Of a stretch of DNA of 64,000 nucleotides, positions 5,784 through 30,420 are shown piece after piece. How positions within the stretch are numbered: the stretch's first letter is position 1; each line of letters begins with the position of its first letter. The position numbers were made by a program, and so were the translations under genes. Below the pieces are notes generated by a model. That model searched no databases, was not told the origin of the DNA, and saw nothing but the letters and a program-made list of their open reading frames with translations. This DNA comes from Octopus sinensis (lineage: Eukaryota). The stretch is taken from the NCBI RefSeq assembly GCF_006345805.1, contig NC_043006.1, forward strand, positions 53,878,001-53,942,000. Direction: 5' to 3'.

Positions 5784-5869
<86 letters not shown>

Positions 5870-6091: not shown

Positions 6092-6140
<49 letters not shown>

Positions 6141-6141
6141 G

Positions 6142-6176
<35 letters not shown>
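3961..6176. repeat. Near-identical ~1.09 kb tandem duplication rich in compound microsatellites
   Basis: GATATTTCTTCTTAAAACC... at 4541 and 5630; unique blocks 4320-4700 vs 5408-5790 and 4760-4920 vs 5866-6030 appear identical outside repeat-length differences. Confidence 0.9.
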
Positions 6177-6177
<1 letters not shown>

Positions 6178-8650: not shown

Positions 8651-9793
8651 AATTTTGGTCACCCGTCTTGATCAATTACTGACCATCACATGTAATTTAA
8701 AATTAACTAAAAATAGAAGCTGGCTGTTTCAAGCCCAACAACTTCATCATCGACACAGTATTTTTGTAAGGATTTTCCCCTCATAAGATTATTAAATCAA
8801 AAGAACTGTTATTGAAACGATCACTCTTCGGAAATTTTTTTTTGCTTCAGGTACTCAAAAGAATTGCAGAAATGAAGCTTATTCATAATCGTTTCTCGCT
8901 ATAGTTGGAATAAAAGATACGCGAAACTGAAATTAATTATACTCTCTCGGCTGAAGCACCAGCTTAAAGGCTTTATAAGATTGTGAAGAAGAGGGGTCTG
9001 TGTCCGTTTCTGATTGAGATGCAAGCTGGCTACGGCGGATACCCACTGTATACATGGACACCTGGCGAAGAAAGATTCACGGCGACAATCGAACAAATGT
9101 TACTATTGGAATACCGTATTTGCCTGCGTATAGGACGCACTCTCACAAAGACAAACCCTAACTTTTTTCTTTTTGTGTGTATGTGTGTGGTGGAGATATA
9201 TTTTGTGGAAAAGCAAATTTAATGTTTCTCGCCATACACTAATACACTTGATATCCCATCCGTTATACGGTTGCATTAGTTGATTGACAATCTTTTGTTA
9301 CATTTAAGAAAAATAAAGCGCGTCTTATACACTGGCATATACTGTAGATAATCACGGAAGAGTCTTGTATTCGTTGCTGCTTTCAAAGATTTTCAAAATG
9401 GTGATCATTGTTCCATATTACAGTTGAGACAAATCGAATAATTATGTTTGCAAATACAACAAAGAAAGTAATCAAGCCGTTTTTTGGGGGGGGGGGTTTT
9501 CCACTTCAAAATCCAGACTCAAACCAGTCAGGCATGTAGACCACCTTTATTATTGAAGGAGTGAAATGGATTCTGAAATTTCTTATCGATTACGTTGCAA
9601 TCAGCAAAATGAGAGCTTAAAGAGGAATTTGTGGCGCAGCTACTACTGTCCACCAAGACTATTCTCAGCCCACTCCCTTCTGTGTTTTATAGTTCTCACA
9701 GCCTTAACAGAAGAACTTAAGACCAAACACACCACGTGATTTATCTGGGGGAAACACAGTAACAAGCGAACGAATCACCACCTCTGCACTTGA

Positions 9794-9838
<45 letters not shown>

Positions 9839-9979
9839 TGTGTGTGTGTCTGGTGTGTGTGTGTGTGTGTGTGTGTGTGAGTGTGTGTGTGTGTGTGCAC
9901 TCATACATATACCCTTTCATTTTTATTTTATTTTATTTTGCTTTGGGTAAGGGGCCACGCTCATCGTGTTTGCAGGCCC

Positions 9980-10410
9980 TTTAAGGCTGGTAAGAATAAG
10001 TTCAATATCTTTATGCTTAATAAAGTACAAATTGCTGATTGCAGGACAAACAATAGGCAGAGACAATCGATGTTCAGTGGAGAAAGGATTGGTTGGAGAA
10101 GTTCAGTGCGAGACTTGTGATGGTGGTGGTAATGGTGTAGGAGGATGCTATATGAGTGACATTGGGAGCGGGGACCAAAAGGTCAGGAGTGTCTGGGAGG
10201 CAGTGGCTCGATACCAGCCGGCACCAAGGTGCAGAGGGCGTTGCAGTAGCAGTGAGAAAGGTAGAGGACACACAGCAAGCATGTCACCCAAAGGTTGCGT
10301 ATGTTGGCAAGGGACTTCATTCCGATCGGTCGTCTGATCTTTGGGAGGACCAAATTCTACAATGTTTGTGTCGTAGCACTGGGGTCAGTGGTGGTAGCTT
10401 TGTACAGTGT
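9980..10410 (-). mobile_element. CR1/L2-group LINE ORF2 3' remnant
   Basis: Minus translation LYLSHCYCNALCT...KSRTELLQPILSPL resembles the FYRYYNGLCS...RT..Y..SF.PRT C-terminus of CR1-group ORF2; heavily decayed. Confidence 0.45.
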
Positions 10411-10639
10411 TAAATATTCATAAACTCACACATGCACACAAATAGCTATATTATTGATTCTGTTATTATCATTTTTAAATTGTTACCCTAGATAATAATA
10501 GAGTCAATGATATCTTCGCAAATCATTTTCTCGTGAATGATTTGCTCCGTATTAAAATTGTGTGTGTGTGTGTGAGTGTGTGAGTGTGCACGCACACGCA
10601 CGCACATATACACATCACCGATTTCCACCACATACATTA

Positions 10640-11300
10640 GACGTGGCTGTGTGGTCCGAAGCTTGTTTCCCAGTCATATGGTTCCGGGTTCAATCCTACT
10701 GCGTGGCACCTTTGCCAAGGGTCTGCTACTACAGCCTCGGGCTGACCAAAGCCTTGTGAGTGGATCTGGGCGACGGAAACAGAAAGAAGCCCGTGTTTGC
10801 GTTTGTCCCCACCAACGCTTGACAACAGGTGTTAGTGTTTTTACGTCCCCGTAACTAAGCGGTTTCAGCAAAACAGAAAGATAAAATAAGTACAAGGCCT
10901 GAAAAAAAAAGGTACTATTTAAGAAGAGTGGTCCCGGTGCGCGCACTCGCGTACTCGCGCATCCGCGGTAGCTAGTCGTGACTAGTCGATCCTTACTTTG
11001 TGTTATTGTGTTTTATTTACTTTGTTTAAAAAAAAAATTTACTTTGTGCAAAAATGTTATTTATTTTGTGTTTTATTTACTTTGCTAGGTAATAGCAAAG
11101 ATCGACTAGTCACGACTAGTAGGATCGACTAGTCACGACTAGCTAATGCGGATGCGTGAGTACGCGAGTGCGCGCACCGGGACCACTCTTCTTAAATAGT
11201 ACCAAAAAAAAACCAAGTCCTGGAGTTGATTTGTTCGACTAAAACCCTTCAGTGTGGTGCCCCAGCATGGCCGCAGTAAAATGACTGAAACAAGCGAAAG
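10640..11300 (+). mobile_element. SINE-A interrupted by a MITE
   Basis: Head at 10643 (GTGGCTGTGTGG); body resumes after 11212 (AAGTCCTGGAGTTGATTTG...GACTGAAACAAG). Confidence 0.85.
10911..11203. mobile_element. Mutator-like MITE with 83-bp TIRs and 9-bp A-tract TSD
   Basis: TIR 10911-10993 vs 11121-11203, 3 mismatches; A9 at 10902-10910 and 11204-11212; AT-rich core. Confidence 0.85.
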
Positions 11301-11324
11301 AGAAAATATATAAATAGGTATCAA

Positions 11325-11505
11325 ATTTTGGTACAAGCCCAGCAGTTTTGGCGAGGACTTAAGTCGATTGACTGGTACATATTTTATCGACCCAGAAAGG
11401 ACGAAAGGCAAAATTGACCTCGGCGGTAATTTGAACTCAGAGCACAAAGACGGACGAAACGTCGCTAATTATTTTGCCCTGCATGCTAACTGTTCTGCCA
11501 GCTCG
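11325..11505 (-). mobile_element. SINE-B
   Basis: ACTGGTACATATTTTATCGACCCAGAAAGGACGAAAGGC...TTTGAACTCAG is the reverse complement of SINE-B. Confidence 0.8.
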
Positions 11506-11591
11506 CCGCCTAGTATGCATATGCACATTTACAAATTTAATTACACGTACACACACAAATACATGCACACACTCACACTAAAATACTTAGG

Positions 11592-11945
11592 CGCAGGGGT
11601 GGCTGTGTGGTGCCGGGTTCAGTCCCACTGCGTGGCGCCTTGGGCGAGTGTCTTCTACTATAAGCCTCGGGCCGACCAAAGCCTTGTGAGTGGATTTGGT
11701 AGACGGAAACTGAAAGAAGCCCGTCGTATATATGTGTATGTATATGTGTGTGTGTTTGTCCCCCCCCCATCGCTTAACAACCGATGCTGGTGTGTTTGTA
11801 TCCCCGTAACTTAGCGGCTCGGCAAAGACACCGATAGAATAAGTACAAGGCTTATAAAGAATAAGTCCTGGGGTCGATTTGCTCGACTAAAGGTGATGCT
11901 CCAGCATGGCCGCAGTCAAATGACTGAAACAAGTAAAAGAATAAT
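11592..11945 (+). mobile_element. SINE-A, near full length
   Basis: GCAGGGGTGGCTGTGTGG...CCAGCATGGCCGCAGTCAAATGACTGAAACAAGTAAAAGA. Confidence 0.9.
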
Positions 11946-12354
11946 AAATCAATGCGCGTGCACACACACACACACACACCCCCGCAATTGTATACATAAT
12001 CGAACACATAGACACACGAATGCGTGCGCACGCACACTCATACATACACACAAACTTACGAATACTTATAAACATGCATATATATATATATATACATTGT
12101 AAACAAAAATAGACACACACACACACACACACGTACATACATAAACATGCGTATGTGTAGATACACGTAAACTTCCACACAAACACATACATACATACTA
12201 ACACACATGGACAAACATACATGCATGTATATAGACGCATAAACAACGTACACAGACATACATAAACAAGCACACACGTCCAGTAGAGAGAAAAAACGAC
12301 AATAACATTTCTGACAAAAGATTTCAATTCATAAAATACAGCTTACCTCGATCT

Positions 12355-12500
12355 CTTCACCGATTGGTCAACTGCTTAATTTAAGCTCCGCCTATCAAGG
12401 CGGGTCTTTCCACAAATATATGTTTCTGTCGGCGTGAAACTCGTAGTATTTTCATGTTTAACGTGTACCGCCAGTTGCTTGCTTCAAAGCCGGCTGTTTT
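12355..12500 (+). promoter_or_regulatory. Probable promoter of the bHLH-Zip gene
   Basis: Non-repetitive CpG-rich patch 300-450 bp upstream of ATG 12802 with ATTGG (12363-12367), CTCCGCCT (12386-12393) and AGGCGGGT (12398-12405). Confidence 0.5.
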
Positions 12501-12607
12501 TTTTTTAACTGGGGTTGTATTTTAACACCAAAGATCTTACACTGGAATTACACACATCAGTTTGAATTGCAACGTTTTTTTTGTAAACGTCTGAATTTTT
12601 TTGTGTT

Positions 12608-12647
<40 letters not shown>

Positions 12648-12801
12648 TATATATAATTATATTTATATATATATATTATACATGCACACATATTTTAAAA
12701 TCTGGCTTACTTTGAAGCGAAAAATTAACGTGCAAAATACATTGAACATATCACGCGTAAACTTTATTTAGTTAAAAGGACTATATATATAAACGCACAA
12801 A

Positions 12802-13471
12802 ATGAACGATAGAAAAAGTATGAGTGAAATAGCAGCAGATTTTATTGACCCCTCTACGTGGCCTTTACTTCATAATGATCCTACACTAGAAGAGTTCGAA
12901 TTCATGTCACAGTCTCTGGAGTTAAGTTCTGTCAACGACGAATGGCTATCGTCGTCGGATCCTTTCAGTGATTTCAACTTCGATAATTTTGAAATGTTAT
13001 TTGCAGACCCCGACTTTCTTGTTGCTAATCGTATTGACAATCACAACAGCGAAAACACAGACCGCAATAGCAGATCGACTCGTAATCCTAATCCTAACTT
13101 ATCATCTGCGAACCCTTCACCCACGCACACCAATTATGAGTCGGATTTCTTGGCAACTGGTCAAGACGAACAACAGACACCATCGCCATCATCTTCATCA
13201 CGAGAATTCTTCTCTTCACAAACTTCAGCACCACCGTCACCCTGGTCCCAACATTCTTCTGTCGGTTCCCCATTGTCAACACAACCAGATTCACCACTCG
13301 GATTAAACACATCTGAGAATTCTTTTGATTTTCGGACTTTACTAAGTAAATCAAATCTTCAAGTTCCAGTTGAACAGACCCCAAACAAACCCCAGCCTAA
13401 GGAAAAGGGGAAGAGAGGTCGACCTCCAAAGAAAAACCTCGACCGACGAATACAGAAAGGGAAAAGAAATG
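12802..13471 (+). CDS. bHLH-Zip (Myc/Mxd-network-like) gene, coding exon 1: acidic-aromatic N-terminus, Ser/Pro-rich region, AT-hook
   Basis: 223-codon complex ORF from AAAATG, ending at strong donor AATG|GTAAGA (phase 1); KGKRGRPPKK at 13405-13434; phase matches exon 2. Confidence 0.8.
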
Positions 13472-16400
13472 GTAAGATTCTTTTTTTTTTTTTTTTGTTC
13501 CGTTTCTAATCAAACCCTTCTTCGTTACTAAAATTAATTACTCCTTACCATAACTTTGTTATTTCTATTCAATACATATTAATTAACAAGGTAGTCTCTA
13601 TGTAATCGCTTGACCGGCGACGATCTTCTATATTACGACTGTAAACTTAATTTTAAAAAATTACAAATTACAATACAAACATGAACGTCACTGAATTAAT
13701 GCTTGAAACTTGTATAAAAAAACATATATTTAACAAGAATAGTCAATATAGCAGCGAGACTCCACTTCTGTTAGATGTAGGGTTTCTCGTTTCGATTCTT
13801 GTACAAGAATCTGGTGGAGTCAGTTACTAAATTAGAACAAATAATATATTAGTCAAATATATATATATTCAGATAATTACACTACCCAGAAGGTTCTTGT
13901 TCATAGATCTGCTCAATCAGAGCTACCATGGGCTAAACAATAATTTATCAGTTGTAAGTTAGATAACAGCATACACTTATACACTTACCCCACCACGGAA
14001 CATGTAGCCTCTTCTTTCACATTAATTTATACTTACACTATTCAAAAATTAGGGGTTCGAATAAACTCTTCACTCTGGACATTATTCAGTTTTTTGTCTC
14101 TCTTTCTGTCAACAAATAGCGTTTTCCTTTTGTTCTCAAAGCTTACTTTCTTTGTACCCTAAGGTACGCTGAGGTCAACCCTGATTAGCAAATGCCATAA
14201 TGGGTATGGGATGAGGGAGTACGTCCCATTTTTAAAACGGTAGGGTATAAGGAATTTGGCTGTTATTTCTAGCAGGTTGAATGGTCATGTAGAGGCTTCC
14301 TCGTTAGCTCGTTTAAACATACAATAGTGGTGGGGAAAGCAAACACTCCATTGATAACTAATGCTTGTAAGCGTATATTTATGAATGTATTTTGTTCATA
14401 ATGGTTAACTTTTACGACCAGTCAGTCTTACCATACCAGTTCTTTGTAGATTTGGACAAATTTTACCACAGAGCATTTTTGCTTTGTATAAGTTTATTTA
14501 TACATTTGGGTTACACTTTGTTAAAGTTAAAAGAAAAAAAAAGAATACTAAGGAAACTAGTCTTGGGATTCCCACACGAACCGTATTGAAGACACACTTT
14601 CCTTCCACCTCATGATTTTTGACAACCGGCATGACAACACACACACACACACACACTTACACTCACATACATCAGCATGGTGAAAAAACTGCCGGGGTAC
14701 TCTCTTCTCTTTTTTTTTTATACGTAACCCAGTCATTCCAAACGCCATAGCAACGAACGAAGCTCTAATACTTCTAACCAGCCAACCTTTTGTCTATGCA
14801 TTTTGTAACCAATCCCTCGTTCGTTTTTATTTAAGCTTGAGAGACGATGGGTCAAACTTCCTCGATCGTTACCAGTAAAATAAATAAATACCAGTGACAT
14901 TAATTCAAACAACTCTGTCCCTCATTCCCTGGTTGTATCCTGACAAATAAGCAAATTTTATTCAGACGATAAAAACAAAGTGTTATAGCAGAACTAACAA
15001 AGTTTAATTGTGTTAGTTTGTCTTTGTAGAGATACTATAGCGACTTACTTTTGAAACTGTCCCTTATACCCCCCTACGATCTCATAGTAGCTAGGTAAAA
15101 CTTTATTTTTCTTCATTCCATATCTATAAATGTAGACTCAGATTTATCGAAAACTAAGGAGAGATTTATTTTTAGCTGAAAACCTTATTCTCCTATGGGC
15201 ATACACGCCGTTTGTTGCTGCTATTCCCAGTGGAAACGAAACCAGGTCGCTGTATCTATTTGCAGAGAATTTACCTCTTAGCTTCATCGTTTCTCACAGC
15301 TGAGAGAGTTCTTTATGAAACACAGTCTCTTTATTTTTAATAAAATGTGATGACTGGATCTCGTCATAATGACTGGTGGCTTACTTTGTCTTTGATTCTG
15401 GCAAAGTCGAACTAGAAAAGCAACCTTAGTCTGATTTTCTTACCGTCTACACCGAATCCATTCCCTCTTTCTTTCTAAAGTGACTATCAATTCTCTTATC
15501 TCTTTTTATATGCACTTCTTTCTGTGAGTTGAATATACAATGTCAAGCATCCTAATTCACATTTCAACTGTCTCCCTCCCCCTCGCTTCCATCTGTTTCT
15601 CTAACAAGTATGATCTTTAAAAGGATAGATAAGTGAAAGTGATAGGTTGTACCTTACACGAAAATAGTCACTTAAACTGGGTTGTAGAGATGGCGAGTGG
15701 GGTGACTTTTGTATAACGTCTTTGCTGATAAAAAAAAAATATTCTCTAAAAAGTCTTTCGCAGAGTATCTCCCAAGACAACAGTTTAAAAAAATTAGCTT
15801 AAGGTCCCTCTAATGTTTTATATACTAAATAGAATTTAGTCCTTTTTTTTTAATACAGGAGATGAATAGGGCTGAGGTGTTGCCCAGTTAAAAGGGATGC
15901 GAGACGTTTCCTTTTGTCAGTTAATAACTTGTTTTGTAGTTTGACGTGAGTTAATATGTATATGTCACCTAATGTGTTAAGAAGTTTAATCTTCAATTTG
16001 TACTATGTTAATTAGTGTCAAATATTAAAAAGCAAACACATTCTGAAAATTCGCCCTAAAAGACTTTTGACATTCTGATTGATACGTGTAATAAATTCAC
16101 GGGCATAGTTTCCAATTTAGTGAAATAATTTCAGGCTCTCAGTTTAATTACAATTCCTGCCAGGGAATTAGATTCATCGCTATCGGAGGGTTTGCGCAGA
16201 ATATGGTCACTAGTTCCTTCCAGATTTAATGAAAAAATATCCCCCTAGGTGTTGAATACTGAATAAATAAAGATCAACTATATTCTATATCTCCCTCACC
16301 CGTTGCATGCTTGTGGTCTTGTGTCAATAAATGTTTTTCAATGCAACAGTTGTATTTTCGTCGTTATTTCATAATTAATCACTTTTTTTTCACTGAATGT

Positions 16401-18160
16401 TTCAGCGTTATCGTTAAAACAAACTTATTTCTTGTGTTCGCATAAAAAAATATAAGACAGTGGAAATTTTTAGAAAGTTTAGTTTGAAAGTTTATCGGCG
16501 CCTTTAATTTTGAACCTCAAAGTTAGAGGGAGCCTCTTATACGCCTTCGATTTTTAAGAAATAGCAGCTAAATTCCTTTCTACTATCTTAAATCAGTCTT
16601 GATGCAGTCCTATATATATATATATGTAAAATGACGGTGTTAATGACTGAAATACTTTTTGATCCATAAGTCTGCTCGATCATTTTTAGTTATAGTTGGG
16701 AGCTGAACAACCACTACAACCGCTCCTGCCATCAACTTGATCAACCGCAATACTTTCGACCCTTTTTAGATAAAGGAGTCGTGATATTTAGCGTTTATTG
16801 CAACAAACAGAGATTTGTCCCTATATTGGCACAAGAATAGATAAAATATTTAATATAAACACAAGGCCCTAAAATAGTTAGGGGATGGGAAAAGTCGATA
16901 TTGGTACTTTTATTTTGTCGACACCGGAGGGTTGAAAGCTCGGGATGAATGTAAACACCGAGTACAAATACCGTAATGCTTTTTTCATCTCCTCCTCCTT
17001 GCCGACTCTTTTGATCAACCATCGATTAAATGATGTTAGGAATTGAGTGTTGCTTTGATCATCGGGGTTCCTTCCCCAAATAAAATATTTTCTATAACTT
17101 AGGGAAAATATATTGTATTTATTCAACACTAGTTATGTAGTATAAGATATTAGTTAAATAAAGGTATTTCTCCTACAAGTACTTGCCGGAGTACGTAATA
17201 AACAAGCATTTTTATTGCAGTAAATTGAATTCATGAAAACAGTAAGGAAATTTTCAGTAAATAGTTTTTAGGTTTTTTTATTGTTTCTATAAAACATTGG
17301 GTTTTTTGTATGCCTGATACAATTATATAAATTGCACTCCTTGCGTCCATGTCATATTGTCAGTAAATGAGTTTCTTTATTAAATTCATAAAATATAACA
17401 GGTCATTTGCTTGTGTTTTTGTGGATCAATACTGTAGTAATTATCTGATCATACAATTCGATTCTATGTAGGTTTCGATTAAAACCAGTTAGCTCTACGT
17501 AGATCACCAATTCCGTCTGCATTCCCTTAAAATTTTTCAGGTTTCTACCCAAGTAGTAGTTTAAACCTAGGATGGCTCTAATCGAGCAGATCGTCTTAGT
17601 TTATCTTGGGTTAGGGTTAGGACAACATTATCTAAGACGGTAGAGGTGTCATTGGGGGGGGGGTGCTATCTCTAGCGGGTCAAGTGACTACATAGAGGCT
17701 TATTCCCTGGCTACCCAAACAGAAGTACGTCGAAGTGTATATATTAATCTTGTATTTGATCGTCGAAGATTGAGTTTATCTCCTTTTATGGTCGATTACA
17801 GTTTTTAAAAACACGATAAATGTGACACAATACATTTTAAAACTTTTGGTCATATATTGCCCCTATACGTTCTCAGTATTAAAATTCCGGGCTAGTTCAT
17901 CCTAACAAGATCGATCGATAAAATACGTACTCCTTTGAGTGTAATCGATTATAGAGCTGAATAGGCAGTGCTCCGGCATGGCCGCAGATTGAAATCTGTG
18001 CAAAAATATCCCATTGTTGTAGGTTCAATTCCCGTCTGCTTTGGCTTGGTAAATTTACTATTTCAAAAGATTGTATGTTGCATATCACTTTTCTTTATGA
18101 AGTAAAATAAAACGGTCTTTTTTTTATCATTTCGATTCCTTTTAGCTATCATTTCTCCAG

Positions 18161-18559
18161 AAATACTCGAAGACTCAATGGTGAGACTGTCCCACACAAA
18201 TCATACAAACACCAGTTGTAGTAGTAGCACACCAACAGCCGTAACAGAGAGAAAGAAACGTAAATGCATGACAGACGAAGAGAAGAAAATTCATAACGAA
18301 CTGGAACGAAGGCGCCGTGCTGCCATGTCTGTGCGTCTGGCACATTTAAAAGACTCTGTTGAAAAAATTCGCGATGATCCAAAAGCGTCGACAAAAAAAA
18401 TAGTCGATGAAGCAATTGTTGCTATTGAGGACTGTAAGCTCCATGAGCAGGAACTTCTGATCGAGAAACAGAATTTGGCAGATCACCGGCGGAGGCTAAA
18501 GGCGCGGATACAATCTATGGAAAACGGAACAGATTATTCTTTCACAGCAACGCTAACAG
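18161..18559 (+). CDS. bHLH-Zip gene, coding exon 2: basic helix-loop-helix leucine zipper
   Basis: Acceptor TTTCTCCAG|; phase 1 puts it in frame with ORF 18178. HNELERRRR...LKD...KASTKKIVDEA...EQELLIEK..L...RRRLK aligns ungapped to Myc and Mxd bHLH-Zips. Donor ACAG|GTACAT at 18560; 399 nt. Confidence 0.9.
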
Positions 18560-18569
18560 GTACATTTTA

Positions 18570-19290
18570 TCTTTCATGTTTTTGGGGTCGATAAGGCATT
18601 GCCCAAAATACTGGGTCGATTTAATCGACTAACCAATCTCTCTCTCTCTCTCTCCCTCTCCAGGAAATCGGGCCTTTATTATTTACTGTAAGGAGGGTGG
18701 CTAGACAGAATCGTTAGCGAATCACCCTTGTACTTCTTGCGACTCTTTACGTTTTGATTTCAAATCCCGCCAAGATCAACTTTGCCGTTTATCCCTCCGG
18801 GGTCAAATAGAGCAGTACCAGTCAAATATAGACTTACTCCCCTTTCCCCTTGAGCCCATGTCAGAAATACTTGGGAGGAGGAAGGAAGCGAGCCGGCAGT
18901 TGTCAGTCAGATTGTTGGGGCAATGCGTTGCAGCAATTTTCCCTGCTGTTTACATTCTTCGTTCAAATCTCGCCGAGGTCAGATTTGCTGTTCATAAGGA
19001 GGGCGGCGAGTTCGCTGAATTGTTTTTGCATGTGGGCGAGGGGTACATGATTGGCTTTTGTTCCCGGCTCATAACGCTTTGCATTCAAATCCTGCAGAGG
19101 TCAACTTTGCCTTTCCTCCATTCGAGACCGATTTAACAAACTACCAGTCAAGTAGTGAATCGATGTAATTTGCTGTCCCCACCCCTGCCCACTACCACTA
19201 ACAAATGCTGGCTATGTTGCTAAACAATCGGTATTTCTTCCGGCTCTTCACGTTCTGAATTCAAATAACCCCTCTGGGATCGATGTGACA
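18570..19290 (+). mobile_element. Array of 4-5 decayed SINE-B units
   Basis: Recurring CGTT..GA.TTCAAAT...GAGGTCAACTTTGC motifs near 18750, 18960, 19080 and 19250. Confidence 0.7.
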
Positions 19291-19294
19291 GTTG

Positions 19295-19462
19295 AGGTCC
19301 ATTAAGCTTTTTCTTATTTCTTTATTGCCCACAAGGGGCTAAACACAGAGGGGACAAACAAAGACAAACGGATTAAGTCAATTACATCGATCCCAGTGCG
19401 TAACTGGTACTTATTTAATTGACCCCGAAAGGATGAAAGGCAAGGTCCATTAAGCTTTTTCT
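19295..19462 (-). mobile_element. 5'-truncated SINE-B (128 bp) with 20-bp target-site duplication
   Basis: AGGTCCATTAAGCTTTTTCT at 19295-19314 and 19443-19462 flanks an antisense SINE-B tail. Confidence 0.85.
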
Positions 19463-20199
19463 GTTGCCAAATTTATTCAGTGTAGTCTTTTCATTTTTTT
19501 TAATCTTGCCATGACTGACTTGCTTATTTTGCTATTCAGGATCAAATTAATAAATAAAAATAAATTATATTTAATATGGTTGCCTGATTTGGCAAGAAAG
19601 TAAATTTTTAATCTCTTAGTCCCCACTGTCTGTCGTAAATGGCTGGTCAGTTCAGACAATGGGTAGGAGTCGAGGAGGTTCAGTCTTTTAAGCTTGTACG
19701 TTTAAGATTCAGTTTGCCTTATCTGGGGCCCTGTATGTGATACGCGTTCCTTTACTTTATGGCATTCTTGGAGTATGCGAATTAAAACATTTAAATTGGA
19801 AATAAGTAGAAAGGTAGTTCACCGCTATTTTCGTTAAATACATTAATGTACCTCTACTACAGATATTATTTACCTCTCCTTGCTCCATACTGCTACCCTT
19901 ACCTCTTCTTCCTTGTTTGGAGTCTCTGTGTGTGTGCGTGCGAGTTAGGTTTGAACTAGACAGAAATACAAAGATTATCCCAAACTAGGTAACCAAACGT
20001 GGTTACCCGACAAGCTAAGTGATCGCTGAGTCTTTTTCATATCTACATTGCACTGTCTCAAAAAGAAAAAGGAGTTCGCCAGCAAAAAACAAAAAACGCT
20101 GGTGTCCTAGCTGGAATGCCTTTTTTTTTAACAAAAGGTAGGGTAATAACTTCGGGCTAAACTATATAACAAAGGCGTTTAACATGTAAGGTAATGTTT

Positions 20200-20420
20200 T
20201 TCCTTACGTAATCATGACGTCTCAAATTCACATACGATATTCTAAATTATCGCCCCGTTCTCTAACTCCGCCTCTTCGGCGTTGTTGCAGTTGAAATGGC
20301 GGGAAAGCAGCAACCAATCAGCGTACGGAGTTCGTTTTCCTTTTTCTTCCTCTCCGTATAAGCCCGCGAAACTATTCTTCTTTGTCGAGGCTGCTTTCTT
20401 CGTCATACTTTTCAGATTGA
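20200..20420. promoter_or_regulatory. Intragenic CpG-rich promoter-like island (E2F/YY1/NF-Y/CRE-like motifs)
   Basis: TTACGTAA 20204, ATGACGT 20214, CTCCGCCT 20266, AAATGGCGGGAAA 20294-20306, CCAATCAG 20314, pyrimidine tract 20335-20355, GCCCGCGAAA 20362-20371; about 14 CpG in 170 bp. Confidence 0.6.
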
Positions 20421-20798
20421 ATAAGCTATATATTTTGCTGACATATTGGAGCATCTCCACTAAAAGTATATCGACTAAAAGATTTCATTTTGTATATATT
20501 TTATTGAAACGGTTAAGTCGGCATAATTTCATTGTCTAAATGTCTCAAATTAGGACATTAAAGCATTGTTCGACTCAACATGTAAGACATAAGAGCTACA
20601 CACACACACACACACGATGGTTTATCGCGCCATTTCCGTCTACAACGTTTCCCGCGTGTATACACATATATGTAATATATGTATGTGATGTATGTGTGTG
20701 CATATATATATATATATATATGCTTGTATGTATATAAAATGAACATAGCTGCATGTATTATATGTATAATCGTGAGGGAAAAATATGCTGGCCTTGAG

Positions 20799-20998
20799 CA
20801 GGGGTCCCCAAACATTTTAGACCATCGACCCCTTTATGGAATCTTTAACCCTTCATCGACCCCCTTCGTGGAATCCTTGACCCCCTCATCGACACCCCCC
20901 TCCAGGCATGTACAAGAAAATAAATAAATAATAATAATTAAGTAGATGTGCATTTATCGACCCCATAGGGTCGATATTGACCACTTTGGAGACTCCTG
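20799..20998. mobile_element. hAT (Charlie-type) MITE with 8-bp TSD
   Basis: CAGGGGTCCCCAAA...TTTGGAGACTCCTG; flanks GCCTTGAG / GCCTAGAA (6/8); internal TCGACCCC repeats. Confidence 0.8.
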
Positions 20999-21466
20999 GC
21001 CTAGAAGAATGCTTTGGTAGAATATCTTACATATGTATTTGTGTGTATAAGAACAAGTATGTTTCTTCTTGTATTGATATGATAGTTTGTAAACAAGCGT
21101 CACCATGTGAGTGTCCAGCAATCTTCCATGAAAAAATGTCTAGCCAACGGGAAGTTTTTTCCTTGCTTGGAACCTCATCGGTAACAGGAAGAGCGATCTG
21201 GCCTTGGAAAAGTGGGTATTAAATTGATGCATTTAGCATACTTAATTGAAATCCCACTTAAGCAATGTGATAAGTGTAATCCGTACCCAGTATGTAACTG
21301 GTACTTTTGTTTTATTGGCATTTGAAAAGAGGGAAATGAAGGTTGACCTTGTTGGGATTTGAACTCATTTCTGTGGCTACCTACCCTAAAGCATGTTTTC
21401 TGATGAGAGAGGACCCATACTGCAGTTTCAGTAGTCTTGAAATGAATTCACTTCACTCAAGTACAT

Positions 21467-21792
21467 TCTAAAGACTCCGCCGGTTACGACGACGAGGGTC
21501 CCAGCTGATACGATCAACGGAACAGCTTGCTCGTGAAATTAACGTGCAAATGGCTGAGCATTCCACAGACACGTGTACCCTTAACGTAGTTCTCGGGGAT
21601 AATCAGCGTGACACAGAGAGTGACAAGGCTGACCCTTTGAAATACAAGTACAACTCATTTTTGCCAGCTGAGTGGACTGGAGCAACGTGAAATAAAGTGT
21701 CTTGCTCAAGGACACAACGCGTCGCCGGGAATCGAACTCACAACCTTACAATCATGAGCCGAATGCCCTAACCACTAAGCCATGCACCCTCA
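21467..21792 (-). mobile_element. SINE-D with 13-bp TSD
   Basis: Antisense match to 39390-39712; CACTCAAGTACAT at 21454-21466 and 21793-21805. Confidence 0.85.
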
Positions 21793-22311
21793 CACTCAAG
21801 TACATATAGCCATGACCACATCTAGGTTTCCCACTTAGAAAAAAAAAGGTATTTTTTATGCAACTTATACGGTGTTTTATTGTTTTATAATAGTGGATCT
21901 ACTTACCTACATTTTCAATTAGGCCAACCGTTACATCTTGAACAGTTTGAAATTTATAATTTTGTTCTTACCCATTACTCTATAGGCTACCAGTGATTGG
22001 TTGAACAGTTACATAATAGTTTCCATGGTAAAATAAATGTTTTTGTCCCATCAAATTATACAGAAAAGCATGCTGACAAAAGACCTTCACATGTTATCAG
22101 GGAAAGTAGTGGATCAAAAGACCTAGCCTTCAGTGATACACGATTCATTCTTTTGTTCATTTTACATCCTTTTTTATCATGCTAGCATGAGTTAGATGAA
22201 TATTGTTTTACAGCTGAATACCCCTCTTGTTGATAATACCTGATCTTTTCAATAGGTGTCTTTCTTTCCACTCATCTTGTGCTGACAGACAATTTGTTAA
22301 TAGGAATAATA

Positions 22312-22449
22312 GGCATAGGAGTGGTTGTGTAGTAAGTAGCTTGCTTACGAACCACAATGGTTGCAGGTCCAGTCCCACTGTGTGGCACCTTGGGCAAGTG
22401 TCTTGTGGATTTGGTAGGCAGAAACTTAAAGAAGCCCGTCGTATATATA

Positions 22450-22504
<55 letters not shown>

Positions 22505-22710
22505 ATATAAGTATGTCTCTGCCCCCCCCCCTAACATCGCTTGACGAGATGCTGGTGTGTTTACATCCCCATAACTTAGTGGTACGGCAAAAGCGACCGA
22601 TAGAATAAGTACTAGGCTTACAAAGAATAAATCCTGGGGTCGGTTTGCTCGACTAAAGGCGGTGTTCCAGCATGGCCACAGTCAAATGACTGAAACAAGT
22701 AAAAGAGGAA
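22312..22710 (+). mobile_element. SINE-A
   Basis: GGAGTGGTTGTGTAGTAAG...GACTGAAACAAGTAAAAGAG, with some CpG-to-TpG/CpA changes. Confidence 0.85.
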
Positions 22711-24121
22711 TGTCAGACATCATTTGTAGCTTAGTGCAGGATGTAAAATGAGATAACAGGCTAGCTCTTTGGTGGTTCATGAGTAGGTTACATCAGGAAC
22801 CTTATAACACTATGGGTCATAGTCAATGTACACTATTTTAATATGTTCTGTGAAAATTGAGTGCAAAGGGGTTAAGAAAGAAAGAGTAGCGTGTGTTCAT
22901 CAGAATTGCACTGTTCAATGAATGTATGAGAGCCAAGGTATGTCAGTAGTTATGTGTGATAATTATTGAATAATTTATGCATGGATGCTGCTGTGTAAAT
23001 AAATATGTATCTTAGCTGAACGATAGACAAGAAATGTGAAGAAAAACGTTCAAGTCACATTATTAGGTATTCACTTTCAGATACTCAGCTCATTTTTAAC
23101 TCCAATGAATAACTTTCCTTTCTGGTGGTTCTTTTTCTTTTTGATGTCCTGAACTTTGGCTTTTACAGTGCTGTTGTATTCATTGTTGAACTCCTACCAC
23201 AGTTGGTATAAGTTTAGTTTTAGGATTAGATTTTACCTTTGTGTATATTATGGGCTCACCTTTTGACCCCTATGCTTCCACAGCATGCTGTGTGGGGTCA
23301 TGTCTTATGATTAAATATTCTTCTGTGTGTGTTCTGAAGAGAAATGATACAATTTCTTTTTCTTATTTTTCAATGGTTTCTTTCTTACATCTTCCAGACC
23401 AACAAACTAATTTGAAGCATCAGCTGGAGTGATTATATTTATGCTCACCCGCCTTGCTTGCACACACACACACACACACACACAGAAAGTCAGTAATGTC
23501 ATGATATATAAATAGGGTCTAATTTCAAGGACCTACAAACGCCTAATCTAAAAGCTAATGTTGTCTCACCTATAACAATTCGGCTAATCCATCTCCCTGT
23601 AACGAGTATGAGACAACTAGTGTAGGTCATTGGTCTGCAGCCATGCTGGGGAATTACTTTCAAGAACTGATTAATCACACCAGCCTATCGATCTCTATAT
23701 GTCAGACCATTTAAAAGGGACACAACACTGGTTCATAAATTTAGTCTTAACAATAAACACAAACACATATATTTCTGGATTCTCTCGTTACACAGTCCAA
23801 GGTCACACCAGAATCTGGTTAATACACTTTTTTTGCTCTCTGTTCAAATCTTGAAATGGTTGACATGTTTATATGGTCTGTGTTAAGTGTTCTGAAGTTA
23901 CACAGCAATGTGTCAGTCTGGCTACTATGTAAGTCTTCCATGCTGTTGTGTTACTCTTGGGGGTCTATGACTTCTTACTCAGTTGCCTAGCTTTATGCAT
24001 AGGCATTGAATATAGACAATATTATGCACTTGTATATATGTTACTAAGGAATTATATACATGTATTAGGATGGAAGCATAACGTCACAATCATGAATGCT
24101 TGAACCCTACTGAGTGGGATT

Positions 24122-24305
24122 TTAACTCTTCAGCATTGAAACTGGTCGAACTCAGGCTCTCTCTCAGTCTCCTACCATACAGCATTGTTGTAAAAATAAA
24201 CAGTCACATCATGAAAATCTTGAAGCTACATTAGCATGATTGCTACTTCAAAATAATGTGAATAAATAAGCATTGCATTTTATAGAGTAATTTGAATGCT
24301 TGAGT
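24122..24305. mobile_element. Decayed piggyBac-like MITE (family of 1209-1430)
   Basis: TTAACTCTTCAGCATT...AAAATCTTGAAGCTAC...TAATTTGAATGCT colinear with 1209-1430. Confidence 0.5.
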
Positions 24306-25057
24306 TGGACCAAAGTTTGAGAGTTCTGTTGAACAATACTGGAAGTGTGGGAGCCTTTCAAAGCAGTGCTCCAGCATGCTTGCAGGTTGATGGCTGATTC
24401 AATGATTAGGTAGTTCTGCTGGTGCCAGCCAATGCAAGTCTATTCGTTGTTTGGTGTATACACATGTTGGGTGGTGTTAGCAAAATCTCACATAAATCAC
24501 ACAAAAATGGTGAAGAAAATGTAACCATAGATGTCTCTAAAAGACTGGGTGGTTGTGGCTGAACACTTTTGATCATAAATCTATGCACATTCATAGTATT
24601 TTTTTCATATAGACTAGTTGTAATGTCTGTTACAAATAGTAAATATGGTGTGGAAGTTGTGAGCTTTATGTTTTATCAATCATTGACGCTCTAATAATTA
24701 TTACTACACACACACACACACATGTACATACAAATCTATATATATCTTTTATGCGTAAATTTGAAAGCTTCTATATTTGATGTTGGCTTTGAAATATAAT
24801 TTAATTTCCATTTGGAAGCTTTCGAGATACAACAAATATTAGGAACATACCAAACTCCATTCTCTCTTCTTATTTTATATGACCTTAATGATAAATAGTT
24901 TATATATATATATATATATAGGTACAGGCACAGCTGTGTGATTAAGAGCTATGATTTCAGGTTCAGTCCCACTACATGGCACTTTCTACTATAGCCTCAC
25001 CCCAGGCAGACAAATACCTTGTTGGTGAATTTTGGTTGATGGAAACTGGAAGCCTGT

Positions 25058-25103
<46 letters not shown>

Positions 25104-25109
<6 letters not shown>

Positions 25110-25165
25110 TTTATACGAGCACATTCATTCCCTTTCTCCTCATTATCTATCTATCTATATATATA

Positions 25166-25212
<47 letters not shown>

Positions 25213-25258
25213 TAGATAATGAGGAGAAAGGGAATTAATGTGCTCATATAAAACCTTA
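25104..25258. repeat. Foldback: ~52-bp inverted repeat around a (TA)n spacer
   Basis: TAAGGTTTTATACGAGCACATTCATTCCCTTTCTCCTCATTATCTATCTAT and its reverse complement, 2 mismatches. Confidence 0.85.
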
Positions 25259-25906
25259 TGGTTGAGGTATTAAAAGTATCAGCCATATACTGCAACTGAT
25301 TAAATTTTTGTTGTGCGTGTGTGTGCATATCCACTCATATGTAACTCAGTAGCTTATGTTCTTGCTTGCACCATCAGATTGAACAATATTGTCAGAGAGT
25401 GTCAAAATTGTGATGATATTTGGTTGGAGTTAAGTATGTTTGTGTCATTGGGAATGTTTGGGGGGGGGGGGTGTTCCTCTATATCCTTCTGTCATTACCC
25501 TGTGACACACAAACAATTCACACAGGATAAAGAATGCTTAGTAGCATTTCATTCCTCTTTATAGTCTGAGCTCTTGCCTTTTCAGAGATGATAAAATAAG
25601 TACTGGGGGTTCAATGTAAATTGCCTTCCCTCTCTCCTTAAAAACTGCAGACCCTGTGCCAAAATTTGAAACAATTATCGTTACAATTATAACAAGCACT
25701 CGGAGAGTGCAAACCTCTGCCAAATAAGTACCAGTTATGCACTGGGGTCGATGTAATCGACTTAATCCGTTTGTCTGTCCTTGTTTGTCCCCTCTATGTT
25801 TAGCCCCTTGTGGGTAATAAAGTAACAAAATTATTATAAAGATTGTGCATATGTCTGTATGTATATATAATTTACTTACCTTTTTGTTTTTTTCTCTCTA
25901 TTTCAG

Positions 25907-25953
25907 ACATGGACAGTGGTTTATCTGAAGATGAACATGTATCTGTTGTATAA
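25907..25953 (+). CDS. Probable terminal coding exon 3 of the bHLH-Zip gene (DMDSGLSEDEHVSVV*)
   Basis: Very strong acceptor (TTTTTGTTTTTTTCTCTCTATTTCAG|); phase 1 gives an acidic tail then TAA; followed by U-rich 3'UTR-like sequence. Linkage to exon 2 is inferred. Confidence 0.6.
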
Positions 25954-27764: not shown

Positions 27765-28250
27765 CATATATATGGCACGTAAAAGCACCGTCCGTTGCCA
27801 GCCTCGCCTGGACCCCGTGCCGGTGGCACGTAAAAGCACTATCCGTTCGTGGCCGTTTGCCAGCCTCGTCTGGCCCCCGTGCCGGTGGCACGTAAAAAGC
27901 GCCATCCGTTCGTGACCGTTGCCAGCGCCGCCCCGACTGGCCTCCGTGCCGGTGGCGCGTAAAAGCACCATCCGTTCGTGTCCGTTGTCAGCCTCGCCTG
28001 GCCCCCGTGCCGGTGGCACGTAAAAGCACTATCCGTTCGTGGCCGTTTGCCAGCACGGTCTGGCACCTGTGCGGGTGGCATGTAAAAAGCACCCACTACA
28101 CTCGCGGAGTGGTTGGCGTTAGGAAGGGCATCCAGCCGTAGAAACACTGCCAGATCAGACTGGGCCTGATGCAGCCTTCTGGCTTCACAGACCCCAGTTG
28201 AACTGTCCAACCCATGCTAGCATGGAAAACGGACGCTAAATGATGATGAT
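27765..28250 (-). mobile_element. (CAT)n-tailed retroposon with internal 61-67-bp tandem repeat
   Basis: GTGCCGGTGG units at 27817, 27879, 27946, 28007, 28069; ends ...GGACGCTAAATGATGATGAT. Confidence 0.75.
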
Positions 28251-29964: not shown

Positions 29965-30420
29965 GCAATCATCATCGTTTAACGTCCGTTTCCCGCGCTA
30001 GCACGGGTTGGATGGTTCGATCGGGGTCTGGGGAGCCAGGGGCTGCTCCAGGCTCCAGTCTGATCTGGCAGTGTTTCTACAGCTGGATGCCCTTCCTAAC
30101 GCCAACCACTCCGCGAGTGTAGTGGGTGCTTTTTATGTGCCACCAGCACAGAAGCCAGTCGAGGCGGTGCTGGCATCGGCCACGTTCGGATGGTGCTTTT
30201 TATGTGCCACCGGCACAGAAGCCAGTCGGGGCGGTGCTGGCATCGGCCACGTTCGGATGGTGCTTTTTATGTGCCACCGGCACAGAAGCCATTCGAGGCG
30301 GGGTTGGCATCAGTCACGTTCGGATGGTGCTTTTTATGTGCCACCGGCACAGAAGCCATTCGAGGCGGGGTTGGCGACTGAAATTTACTGGAAAAAAGAC
30401 GAAGGTGTATGAACAACAAG
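29965..30420 (+). mobile_element. (CAT)n-tailed retroposon with four 67-bp tandem units
   Basis: TGCTTTTTATGTGCCACC at 30127, 30194, 30261, 30328; inverse orientation to 27765-28250. Confidence 0.8.

What the first reader, a model, noticed from the sequence alone, without database searches (positions are those of the whole stretch)
12802..25953. Atypical Myc/Mxd-network transcription factor: acidic N-terminus + AT-hook + bHLH-Zip + acidic tail
Seen: three phase-1-compatible exons (670+399+47 nt) give an uninterrupted 371-aa ORF. Established: His-x3-Glu-x3-Arg in the basic region (HNELERRRR) marks CACGTG-binding group B bHLHs, and the loop length matches Myc and Mxd without gaps. Seen: no Myc box I (KKFELLPTPP) or II (DCMW), no intact Sin3-interaction helix, but an AT-hook and a post-zipper extension. 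Inference: a lineage-specific Max-network paralog with an architecture I do not recognise from Myc, Mxd, Mnt, Mga or Mondo.
Basis: partly seen in the sequence, partly recalled or inferred. Interest (0 to 1): 0.85.

Follow-up and report, generated by a model that had tools for sequence, protein, structure and literature searches.

The report
Cephalopod-only Myc-like bHLH-Zip gene
The three exons are a real, selectively constrained octopus gene that databases label "Myc", but it belongs to a transcription-factor family found only in octopus, cuttlefish and squid that has an AT-hook, has no detectable Myc boxes, and cannot be placed confidently in Myc, Max or Mxd/Mnt.

Summary
Exons 12802-13471, 18161-18559 and 25907-25953 (+) have GT-AG borders and give a 371-aa ORF. 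The window is identical to Octopus sinensis chromosome CM016868.1, and the gene is RefSeq XP_029641997.1, "myc proto-oncogene protein". RefSeq uses an acceptor 15 nt upstream (18146), which adds AIISP (376 aa).

- **Constraint:** dN/dS against O. bimaculoides is 0.11.
- **Structure:** AlphaFold2 predicts only the bHLH-Zip helices; the rest is disordered.
- **Distribution:** an exhaustive HMMER search of 1.84 billion representative proteins found relatives only in coleoid cephalopods. These are a second octopod paralog with the same three-exon, phase-1/phase-1 structure, a Sepia esculenta mRNA, and several decapodiform genomic copies.
- **Shared features:** a GRP AT-hook at the end of exon 1, a KRKCM cluster, an H-E-R basic region, a KAS-x-K-x-IVDEA loop/helix 2, and an acidic tail.
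- **Missing features:** no Myc box and no Sin3-interaction domain is detectable by Pfam, by shuffle tests, or in the rest of the window.
- **Placement:** the bHLH-Zip is 26-39% identical to Myc, Max, Mnt and Mxd alike, and tree placement is unresolved.

The most likely function is an E-box-binding, heterodimerising activator of the Max network. I could not test whether cephalopods also keep a canonical Myc, and that test decides how novel this is.

The parts
12802..13471 (+). Coding exon 1 (aa 1-223 plus 1 nt). It encodes an acidic, aromatic-rich N-terminus (aa 1-80: 18 D/E, 3 K/R, 11 F/W/Y), an S/P/T-rich linker, and a basic stretch at its end.
   Evidence: AF2 predicts it disordered. The N-terminal block aa 49-106 aligns with the Sepia homolog (E = 0.006).
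13405..13437 (+). AT-hook KGKRGRPPKKN (aa 202-212; RGRP core flanked by K/R).
   Evidence: A GRP core flanked by basic residues occurs at the equivalent place, the end of exon 1, in all seven family members examined. The expected number of RGRP by chance is 0.002 per protein. Pfam AT_hook is below threshold: Sepia scores 15 bits against a cutoff of 17.4, and the window protein gets no hit.
13472..18145 (+). Intron 1, phase 1, gtaag...tttag.
   Evidence: Paralog B has a phase-1 intron at the homologous position after the basic cluster.
18146..18559 (+). It holds a linker, the KRKCM basic cluster and the whole bHLH-Zip.
18247..18522 (+). ERKKRKCM cluster (NLS-like), followed by basic region H273-E277-R281, helix 1, a six-residue loop, helix 2 and a leucine zipper (L-L-L-M heptads). 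These are aa 258-349 of the 376-aa form.
   Evidence: Pfam HLH. Ungapped 80-aa alignment to human MYC 1NKP_A. AF2 helices 267-299 and 306-349 with block-mean pLDDT mostly 74-91, dipping to 67 around the loop.
18560..25906 (+). Intron 2, phase 1, gtaca...ttcag.
   Evidence: The homologous phase-1 intron occurs in paralog B and in O. bimaculoides and Argonauta. Decapodiform genomic ORFs read through a donor at the equivalent post-zipper site, and the Sepia mRNA is spliced there.
25907..25953 (+). Coding mini-exon 3, encoding the tail DMDSGLSEDEHVSVV plus TAA.
   Evidence: LSEDE(H/Y)VSVV is invariant in four octopod orthologs. The BLASTP alignment to paralog B runs through to its ...EDEECSVV.

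Best explanation
This is a genuine, expressed-type protein-coding gene of Octopus sinensis (RefSeq XP_029641997.1). It is one of two octopod paralogs of a bHLH-leucine-zipper family found only in coleoid cephalopods. Shown here: the gene has three coding exons under purifying selection. [quoted passage not shown] Every family member also carries one GRP-core AT-hook at the end of exon 1, a KRKCM basic cluster just before the basic region, and an acidic C-terminal tail. Inferred: the protein binds E-boxes as a dimer. The zipper has charged residues at core 'a' positions (K and R), and Arg sits where c-Myc has R424. This should disfavour homodimers and favour a partner such as Max, as in Myc. 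The acidic, aromatic-rich disordered N-terminus (DFNFDNFEMLFADPDF) acts as an activation domain. The AT-hook adds minor-groove contacts to AT-rich DNA beside the E-box. The KRKCM cluster serves as a nuclear localisation signal. On this reading it works like Myc, as a Max-dependent E-box activator, but without Myc boxes I/II and hence without their cofactor and degradation contacts. Whether it descends from Myc, Max or Mxd/Mnt cannot be decided from the sequence.
For: Gene model and identity. Constraint: dN/dS 0.108 and exon identity well above intron identity; between Argonauta and Octopus only exons 1 and 2 of the gene give collinear DNA alignments, and the other matches in the window are scattered repeat-like segments. 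Fold: Pfam HLH and AF2 helices 267-299/306-349 with everything else below pLDDT 50. Family restricted to coleoids: the exhaustive HMMER search gave 10 hits at E<=1e-3; 7 are cephalopod-type family members, two of them short unnamed ENA fragments assigned by similarity to the Sepia protein, and the other 3 are one Mnt-like, one Max-like and one MAD-like protein. The Sepia esculenta origin of P0008 follows from SRR runs named in PMC10141105 and PMC10571815. Further decapodiform copies. Shared architecture and exon structure. Basic-region position b10 is Arg, the Myc/Max type, where Mxd/Mnt have Lys (with PMC3177325). Zipper positions Z17-Z18 are His-Arg, aligned with c-Myc Arg-Arg, Max Gln-Asn and Mxd Glu-Gln. 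The loop aligns without gaps to Myc and Mxd.
Against: Nothing functional was tested: DNA binding, the partner, activation and the role of the AT-hook are all inferred from sequence. The start of the basic region is unusually poor in basic residues (E-K-K-I before His, where Myc has K-R-R-T). Paralog B and the decapodiform copies have different residues at Z17-Z18 (for example Glu-Asn), so partner choice may differ within the family and might include A/B heterodimers. Pfam does not call the AT-hook in the window protein. No transcript evidence for the octopus junctions was available.
Confidence: 0.75

Rival explanations
1. It is the true Myc (co-)ortholog. On this view coleoid cephalopods have no other Myc. 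The ancestral Myc evolved fast, lost MB0/I/II, gained an AT-hook and a tail mini-exon, and duplicated in octopods.
For: RefSeq and UniRef call it Myc. For the window protein itself the best PDB match is human MYC, ungapped over 80 aa (22.6 bits against 15.7 for Max). The gene plan matches a canonical Myc: a long N-terminal coding exon, a phase-1 intron, then the whole bHLH-Zip in one exon. The canonical Myc on L007 also has a phase-1 intron. b10 is Arg, H201 is Lys and Z18 is Arg. The N-terminal ADFIDPSTWPLLHND resembles MBIIIa (ECIDPSVVFPYPLND), with p about 0.02 in one of 55 tests.
Against: Pfam finds no Myc_N or Myc-LZ even at E<=10. No Myc-box match survives correction for multiple tests, and the MBIIIa match fails in Argonauta (p = 0.56). 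The family profile scores Max above MYC (51.5 against 44.7 bits). The NJ bootstrap places Myc as sister in only 11% of replicates. No canonical Myc reached E<=1e-3 in the exhaustive search, whereas Mnt-like, Max-like and MAD-like proteins did. H202 is Lys or Arg, not the Val that is invariant in Myc. Absence of a canonical Myc in cephalopods was not tested.
Confidence: 0.4
2. It is an extra, lineage-specific paralog. Cephalopods keep canonical Myc, Max, Mxd and Mnt, and this family arose by duplication of one of them in the coleoid stem and then diverged quickly.
For: The family is monophyletic (90% of NJ bootstraps) and is roughly equidistant, at 26-39% identity, from every canonical family. 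There are multiple copies: two in octopods and several, some possibly on one contig, in decapodiforms. This is typical of a lineage-specific expansion. Other molluscs have ordinary single Myc, Max, Mad and Mnt genes (PMC5381572).
Against: No canonical cephalopod Myc was seen in any result here, although no search could have found one reliably. The RefSeq naming suggests that the annotation pipeline had no better Myc candidate for this name, which is weak evidence.
Confidence: 0.4
3. It is a derived Mxd/Mnt-type repressor that lost its Sin3-interaction domain.
For: NJ places the family next to Mxd/Mnt in 47% of bootstraps. HNELE...RRA is the Mxd/Mnt wording. The best non-cephalopod hit of the paralog-A profile is a SID-bearing Mnt-like Hydractinia protein (42.9 bits). 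The Sepia tail SEEEHINVEV resembles the Mxd1 C-terminal REEIDVDVES (p about 0.02, uncorrected).
Against: b10 is Arg, not Lys. The TTL/SNL signature at L16-H201-H202 is absent. There is no SID (all p > 0.06). Human Mad1 is the weakest of the network hits to the family profile (30.9 bits). The bHLH-Zip is not split by introns, and the N-terminus looks like an acidic activator.
Confidence: 0.1
4. It is a mis-predicted gene, a pseudogene or a chance ORF.
For: No transcript junctions for octopus were seen here. There are two candidate acceptors for exon 2. The Argonauta model has an extra 63-nt exon with no counterpart in the window.
Against: dN/dS is 0.108. The ORF is intact with conserved exon borders in four octopod genomes. 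A full-length Sepia mRNA of the same architecture was assembled in at least four RNA-seq runs.
Confidence: 0.02

Closest known systems
Canonical Myc (human MYC; the invertebrate Myc found on locus L007)
   Same: A C-terminal class-B bHLH-Zip with an H-E-R basic region. Arg at b10, Lys at H201, and the same loop length. Charged residues at zipper 'a' positions, with Arg at the R424-equivalent position. A long disordered N-terminus encoded in one exon, a phase-1 intron, and the bHLH-Zip in a single exon.
   Different: No MB0, MBI, MBII, MBIIIb or MBIV is detectable, and there is no Pfam Myc_N or Myc-LZ hit. H202 is Lys/Arg rather than Val. Only 25-31% identity in the bHLH-Zip. It has an added AT-hook, a KRKCM cluster, and an extra 3' mini-exon encoding an acidic tail.
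Myc-box-deficient Myc paralogs of cnidarians (Hydra Myc3/Myc4; PMC10177328)
   Same: A Myc-labelled bHLH-Zip protein lacking all Myc boxes. It is a lineage-specific paralog family. Hydra Myc3 still dimerises with Max and binds E-boxes.
   Different: The Hydra Myc3 bHLH-Zip is clearly Myc-type and its N-terminus is short and inactive. Here the bHLH-Zip cannot be assigned to Myc, and the N-terminus is long, acidic and aromatic-rich, so it looks like an activator. An AT-hook is not described for Hydra Myc3.
Max
   Same: Max gives the highest profile score to the family (51.5 bits). It shares KAS in the loop and I(L/V)D(K/E)A at the start of helix 2, and the Sepia EKAQHNHLERERR resembles Max DKRAHHNALERKRR.
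   Different: Max is a short protein with no activation region. Its loop is one residue shorter and its Z17-Z18 is Gln-Asn. From memory, not checked here, its bHLH-Zip is split by an intron. Max is single-copy and extremely conserved, whereas this family evolves fast.
Mxd/Mnt repressors
   Same: The HNELE...RRA wording, weak NJ affinity, and a post-zipper acidic segment followed by a hydrophobic V-x-V motif.
   Different: No Sin3-interaction domain. b10 is Arg, not Lys. There is no TTL/SNL signature.
HMGA-type AT-hook
   Same: An R-G-R-P core (P-G-R-P in paralog B) flanked by Lys/Arg, lying in a disordered region.
   Different: A single copy attached to a bHLH-Zip factor. It falls below the Pfam threshold. 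Binding to AT-rich DNA is untested.

Membership tests
Myc | bHLH-leucine zipper at the C-terminal end with the His-Glu-Arg (CACGTG) basic region | tested here: met
   Pfam HLH 26.2 bits. H273, E277 and R281 are present. Ungapped alignment to 1NKP_A. AF2 helices.
Myc | N-terminal Myc boxes I and II (Pfam Myc_N PF01056) | tested here: not met
   No Myc_N hit at E<=10 for either paralog or for Sepia. Shuffle tests of MB0, I, II, IIIa, IIIb and IV gave no p-value that survives correction for 55 tests. No Myc-box-like exon anywhere in the 64-kb window.
Myc | Myc-specific bHLH-Zip residues: b10 Arg, H201 Lys, H202 Val (invariant), Z17 basic and Z18 polar (McFerrin and Atchley 2011, PMC3177325) | tested here: inconclusive
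   b10 Arg, H201 Lys and Z17-18 His-Arg fit. H202 is Lys/Arg, not Val. b1 is Glu.
Myc | Groups with Myc in a bHLH-Zip phylogeny or similarity ranking | tested here: inconclusive
PDB ranking differs by member: window MYC > Max, Sepia Max > MYC, family profile Max 51.5 > MYC 44.7.
Myc | Gene plan: N-terminal coding exon, phase-1 intron, whole bHLH-Zip in one exon | tested here: met
   Window gene and paralog B. The canonical Myc on L007 has a phase-1 intron just before MBIIIb. The 3' mini-exon is an extra feature.
Myc | Obligate heterodimer with Max | not testable with these tools
   Only inferred from charged zipper 'a' positions.
Mxd/Mnt | N-terminal Sin3-interaction domain | tested here: not met
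   Shuffle tests with four SIDs gave all p > 0.06.
Mxd/Mnt | b10 Lys and the L16-H201-H202 signature TTL (Mxd) or SNL (Mnt) | tested here: not met
   b10 is Arg, and the corresponding residues are T/Q-K-K/R.
Max | Short protein without an activation region; Z17-Z18 Gln-Asn; loop one residue shorter | tested here: not met
   376 aa with a 260-aa N-terminal region; His-Arg at Z17-Z18; one gap relative to Max.
AT-hook (PF02178) | G-R-P core flanked by basic residues, scoring above the Pfam threshold | tested here: inconclusive
   The pattern is present and conserved in all seven members. Pfam gives 15 bits against a cutoff of 17.4 for Sepia only, and no hit for the window protein.
Cnidarian Myc3-type (Myc-box-deficient Myc) | Clearly Myc-type bHLH-Zip with a short box-less N-terminus | tested here: not met
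   The bHLH-Zip is not clearly Myc-type and the N-terminus is long and acidic. This is an analogy, not membership.

The most novel reading that the evidence does not exclude
Coleoid cephalopods have no canonical Myc. Its place in the Max network is taken by this fast-evolving family, which dropped Myc boxes I and II (and with them the canonical degron and cofactor-docking sites), gained an AT-hook and an acidic tail, and then duplicated. The two octopod paralogs have different zipper core residues, so they may pair with Max or with each other.
Probability: 0.35. Interest if true: 0.75.

Novelty: new variant of a known kind. Interest (0 to 1): 0.5.

Why it matters
Myc, Max, Mxd and Mnt form one of the most conserved growth-control modules in animals. 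Nematodes lacking Myc and Mnt, and flies lacking Mxd, are the experimentally validated core-member losses cited by McFerrin and Atchley 2011. A clade-wide cephalopod family labelled "Myc" that lacks every Myc box and carries an AT-hook has two possible meanings. Either cephalopods rewired the activator arm of this network, or they added a new arm to it. Either outcome bears on which parts of Myc are dispensable for E-box-driven growth control. It also warns that the public "myc proto-oncogene" label on these genes is a best-hit name and not an established orthology. A single genome-wide search for a canonical Myc in cephalopods would decide which case applies.

Tried and rejected
1. The profile search with full-length alignment A2 was wasted. 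Low-complexity words filled the candidate list, and it did not even recover paralog B.
2. By eye I saw several motif resemblances. They were MBIIIa (ADFIDPSTWPLLHND against ECIDPSVVFPYPLND), a SID (AADFID against AADYLE), MB0 in paralog B (YLYCYD), MBIIIb or the WDR5-binding motif DEEEIDVVSV (PMC11308778) in the tail (SEDEHVSVV), and the Mxd C-terminus. Shuffle tests gave at best p about 0.015-0.02 among roughly 85 tests. I treat all of these as leads, not evidence. The MBIIIa-like and SID-like readings overlap the same residues, which shows how easily such matches arise.
3. Foldseek of the AF2 model against the PDB gave nothing below E = 2, because the model is two long helices plus disorder.
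4. The Rfam and tRNA scans of the window found nothing.
5. Literature searches for the accession numbers and for a cephalopod Myc found no paper on these genes.
6. The 63-nt extra exon of the Argonauta model has no counterpart in the window.
7. The canonical Myc locus L007 shares no repeats with any cephalopod locus. It cannot be used as evidence for a cephalopod canonical Myc.
8. The RKC resemblance to human MYC NRKCTSP was dropped, because the spacing differs and the motif is absent from the canonical Myc on L007.

Full report
**1. The observation**

Reading the window at the stated coordinates shows an ATG at 12802 and a gtaag donor after 13471. A ...tccag acceptor precedes 18161 and a gtaca donor follows 18559. 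A ...ttcag acceptor precedes 25907 and TAA sits at 25951-25953. Joined, the exons give 1116 nt, or 371 aa, with both introns in phase 1.

**2. What it is in the databases**

The protein is 99% identical to XP_029641997.1, "myc proto-oncogene protein [Octopus sinensis]", which is 376 aa. The window is base-for-base identical to O. sinensis chromosome CM016868.1 around that gene.

The only difference from RefSeq is the exon-2 acceptor. RefSeq uses tttag|CT at 18146, which adds AIISP. The O. bimaculoides model uses the same acceptor, with exons of 664+414+47 nt. Argonauta has AVLSP at this point. Octopus-Argonauta DNA homology begins at 18144, so it includes the 15 nt in question. Paralog B splits an Ala codon at the equivalent junction. 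I therefore take 18146 as the main or ancestral acceptor and 18161 as a possible alternative.

**3. Is it a real gene?**

Against O. bimaculoides the CDS has 20 synonymous and 8 non-synonymous differences, giving dN/dS = 0.108. Flanking and intronic DNA is only 82-88% identical. Against Argonauta, only exons 1 and 2 of the gene give collinear DNA alignments; the other matches in the window are scattered repeat-like segments. Pfam finds an HLH domain at 26.2 bits against a cutoff of 20.7. AlphaFold2 predicts two helices, 267-299 and 306-349, and nothing else; block-mean pLDDT in the helices is mostly 74-91, dipping to 67 around the loop. All other residues are below pLDDT 50. This is a constrained bHLH-Zip gene with long disordered arms.

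**4. Relatives**

A profile of the four octopod orthologs was searched exhaustively against 1.84 billion representative proteins. Only 10 proteins reached E<=1e-3.

- Seven are cephalopod-type: the Argonauta ortholog, an octopod genomic fragment, a second paralog ("B"), and a group of three (P0008-P0010). Two of that group are short unnamed ENA fragments, assigned to the family by their similarity to P0008.
- Paralog B is P0011 in O. vulgaris (455 aa). It corresponds to "uncharacterized LOC115228325" in O. sinensis and to P0007 in Argonauta (677 aa).
- P0008 is a 282-aa ORF on 1.3-1.9-kb RNA-seq contigs. Two of the runs are Sepia esculenta larval transcriptomes according to PMC10141105 and PMC10571815.
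- The other three hits are a SID-bearing Mnt-like protein of Hydractinia, a Max-like protein and a nematode MAD-like protein. No canonical Myc reached the threshold.

A second search with a bHLH-Zip-only family profile added more unannotated decapodiform-type exons, including two ORFs reported on an ENA contig of the same length (33,750 bp), so possibly the same contig. Locus L009 from that search shares nucleotide similarity with the Sepia mRNA and a repeat with an Octopus locus, so it is cephalopod. The family is therefore coleoid-wide and, as far as an exhaustive sequence search can see, coleoid-only.

**5. Shared anatomy**

All members have the following features:

- an acidic, aromatic-rich N-terminal region; the window protein and Sepia align there with E = 0.006;
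- one K-G/K-K-R/P-G-R-P-x-K AT-hook at the end of exon 1 (expected chance count of RGRP: 0.002);
- an invariant K-x-R-K-C-M cluster eight residues before the basic region;
- E-K-x-x-H-N-(E/H)-L-E-R-x-R-R;
- D-x-K-A-S-x-K-x-I-V-D-E-A spanning the loop and helix 2;
- a zipper;
- an acidic tail ending in V-x-V(V) or VEIM.

Paralog B has the same three coding exons with both introns in phase 1, at 733+567+68 nt against 670(+15)+399+47 nt for the window gene. In an NJ tree octopod A and B are sisters relative to the decapodiform copies. This suggests a duplication in the octopod lineage.

**6. Is it Myc?**

For Myc:

- the public name;
- the window protein's best PDB hit is human MYC, ungapped over 80 residues (22.6 bits against 15.7 for Max);
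- b10 is Arg, which McFerrin and Atchley (PMC3177325) give as the Myc/Max/Mga state, against Lys in Mxd/Mnt;
- H201 is Lys, and Z17-Z18 is His-Arg opposite c-Myc Arg-Arg;
- the gene plan fits. The canonical invertebrate Myc that turned up on locus L007 also has a phase-1 intron followed by the whole bHLH-Zip in one exon.

Against Myc:

- Pfam finds no Myc_N and no Myc-LZ at E<=10 in any member;
- no Myc-box exon is hidden elsewhere in the window;
- H202 is Lys/Arg, not the Val that is invariant in Myc;
- Sepia's best PDB hit is Max, and paralog B ties Max and MYC;
- the family profile scores Max 51.5, MYC 44.7, USF2 39 and Mad1 30.9 bits;
- pairwise identity is 26-39% to Myc, Max, Mnt and Mxd alike;
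- in 300 NJ bootstraps the family is monophyletic in 90%, and its sister is Mxd/Mnt in 47%, Myc in 11% and Max in 4%.

The placement is unresolved. The "Myc" label is a best-hit name, not a demonstrated orthology.

**7. Motif resemblances that did not hold up**

By eye the N-terminus ADFIDPSTWPLLHND looks like Myc box IIIa (human ECIDPSVVFPYPLND, L007 ECVDPSTVFPYPINE). The same residues also look like the core of a Sin3-interaction domain (AADYLE). The tail SEDEHVSVV recalls MbIIIb, DEEEIDVVSV (PMC11308778), and also the Mxd C-terminus.

Local-alignment scores were compared with 2000 shuffles per pair. The best results were p about 0.02 for MBIIIa in O. sinensis (0.56 in Argonauta), 0.47-0.75 for MBIIIb, above 0.06 for every SID, and 0.02 for the Mxd tail in Sepia. 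These were spread over about 85 tests. None is significant. I report them only as leads.

**8. Likely mechanism (inferred)**

- **DNA target:** the His-Glu-Arg triad predicts CACGTG-type E-box binding.
- **Dimerisation:** the zipper keeps L-L-L-M at the 'd' positions but has Lys, Arg and Ile at the 'a' positions. The Arg aligns with c-Myc R424, which packs against Max Gln-Asn. As in Myc, this should disfavour homodimers and favour Max. Paralog B has Glu-Asn at that point, so A/B or B/Max pairs are also conceivable.
- **Activation:** residues 1-80 contain 18 acidic, 3 basic and 11 aromatic residues. Together with the DFNFDNFEMLFADPDF block, this has the composition of an acidic activation domain.
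- **Extra contacts:** the AT-hook would add minor-groove contacts next to the E-box.
- **Localisation:** RKKRK looks like a nuclear localisation signal.

The working model is a Myc-like activator arm of the Max network that does without the Myc-box contacts.

**9. Comparison with what is known, and novelty**

The nearest functional analogy is Myc. The nearest precedent for a box-less Myc is the Myc3/Myc4 type of cnidarians, which still binds Max and E-boxes (PMC10177328). Those proteins, however, have a clearly Myc-type bHLH-Zip and a short inert N-terminus. Other molluscs surveyed have ordinary single Myc, Max, Mad and Mnt genes (PMC5381572); cephalopods were not in that survey. I found no paper on these genes. 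I rate it a new variant of a known kind.

The open question is whether cephalopods also have a canonical Myc. It is the decisive next step.

**10. Verdict**

- The gene is real, already annotated, and ordinary as a bHLH-Zip.
- Its architecture and its restriction to coleoids are genuine and undescribed.
- Its assignment to Myc is unproven.
- Interest is 0.5, rising to about 0.75 if cephalopods turn out to lack a canonical Myc.

Noticed in passing
window 38029-39039 (-): A 336-aa ORF with Tc5/pogo-type HTH domains and the start of a DDE_1 endonuclease domain (E = 1e-15). It is a pogo/Tigger-like DNA transposon remnant about 12 kb downstream of the gene.
   Followed up: partly
window 56610-57284 (+): A 224-aa ORF matching reverse transcriptase RVT_1 (E = 2e-19), a retroelement fragment. 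A long (AAG)n array at 55409-55811 creates spurious ORFs on the opposite strand nearby.
   Followed up: partly
window 8103-8470 and 58969-59336: The same 184-bp unit occurs as a two-copy tandem (92% match) at two places 50 kb apart. The unit (GGTCGAT...AAATAAGTACCAG) also matches Argonauta flanking DNA at about 75%. It looks like an octopod SINE-like repeat that inserts as dimers.
   Followed up: partly
window 27795-28163 and 30055-30375: Two tandem arrays of 62-67-bp units are reverse complements of each other (arms up to 104 nt, 94% complementary). They enclose about 1.9 kb, starting about 2 kb downstream of the stop codon. This looks like a transposon with tandem-repeat-bearing inverted ends. 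Related segments recur in the window and in the Argonauta locus.
   Followed up: partly
window 3914-6194: A block of about 1.09 kb made of (TG)n-(TAGA)n-(AT)n microsatellites is duplicated in tandem. The (TG)n-(TAGA)n part runs 3963-4320 in one copy and 5045-5408 in the other, and the duplication gives mirrored artefactual ORFs.
   Followed up: no
window 50935-51034: A run of exactly 100 N, which is an assembly gap.
   Followed up: no
L005 (O. vulgaris OX597841.1), gene at 10001-24202: Paralog B lies head-to-head, 320 bp from the start of a NIPA-type magnesium transporter gene. Its Argonauta ortholog is much longer (677 aa) and carries a second GRP-core AT-hook plus further Arg/Lys-rich AT-hook-like stretches. 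RefSeq leaves the O. sinensis copy 'uncharacterized'.
   Followed up: partly
L009 (ENA ERZ21867824 ctg83315l) 9619-11100: A decapodiform family member is very compact. Intron 1 is only about 100 nt, and sequence matching the Sepia mRNA downstream of its coding region lies about 600 nt after the bHLH-Zip exon. The octopus gene, by contrast, spans 13 kb. P0042 and P0043, two ORFs clustering at 90% identity with the family member P0036, are each reported on an ENA contig of 33,750 bp, possibly the same contig, which hints at tandem copies.
   Followed up: partly
L007 (ENA ERZ25067868 ctg79259_84x_l) 9233-10447: A textbook canonical Myc from an unidentified eukaryote. It has MBI HDIWKKFELLPTPP, MBII LIQDCMWNG and MBIIIa ECVDPSTVFPYP. 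A 177-nt phase-1 intron is followed immediately by MBIIIb EEEIDVVTIE, and the bHLH-Zip is in one exon. It was a useful yardstick, but the organism is unknown.
   Followed up: partly
L011 (Argonauta hians) 11433-11495: The Argonauta gene model contains an extra 63-nt phase-1 exon (GFNSTFKPVDSTTCIVKYTDT) between exon 1 and the bHLH-Zip exon. It has no detectable counterpart in the octopus intron, so it is either species-specific or a prediction artefact.
   Followed up: yes
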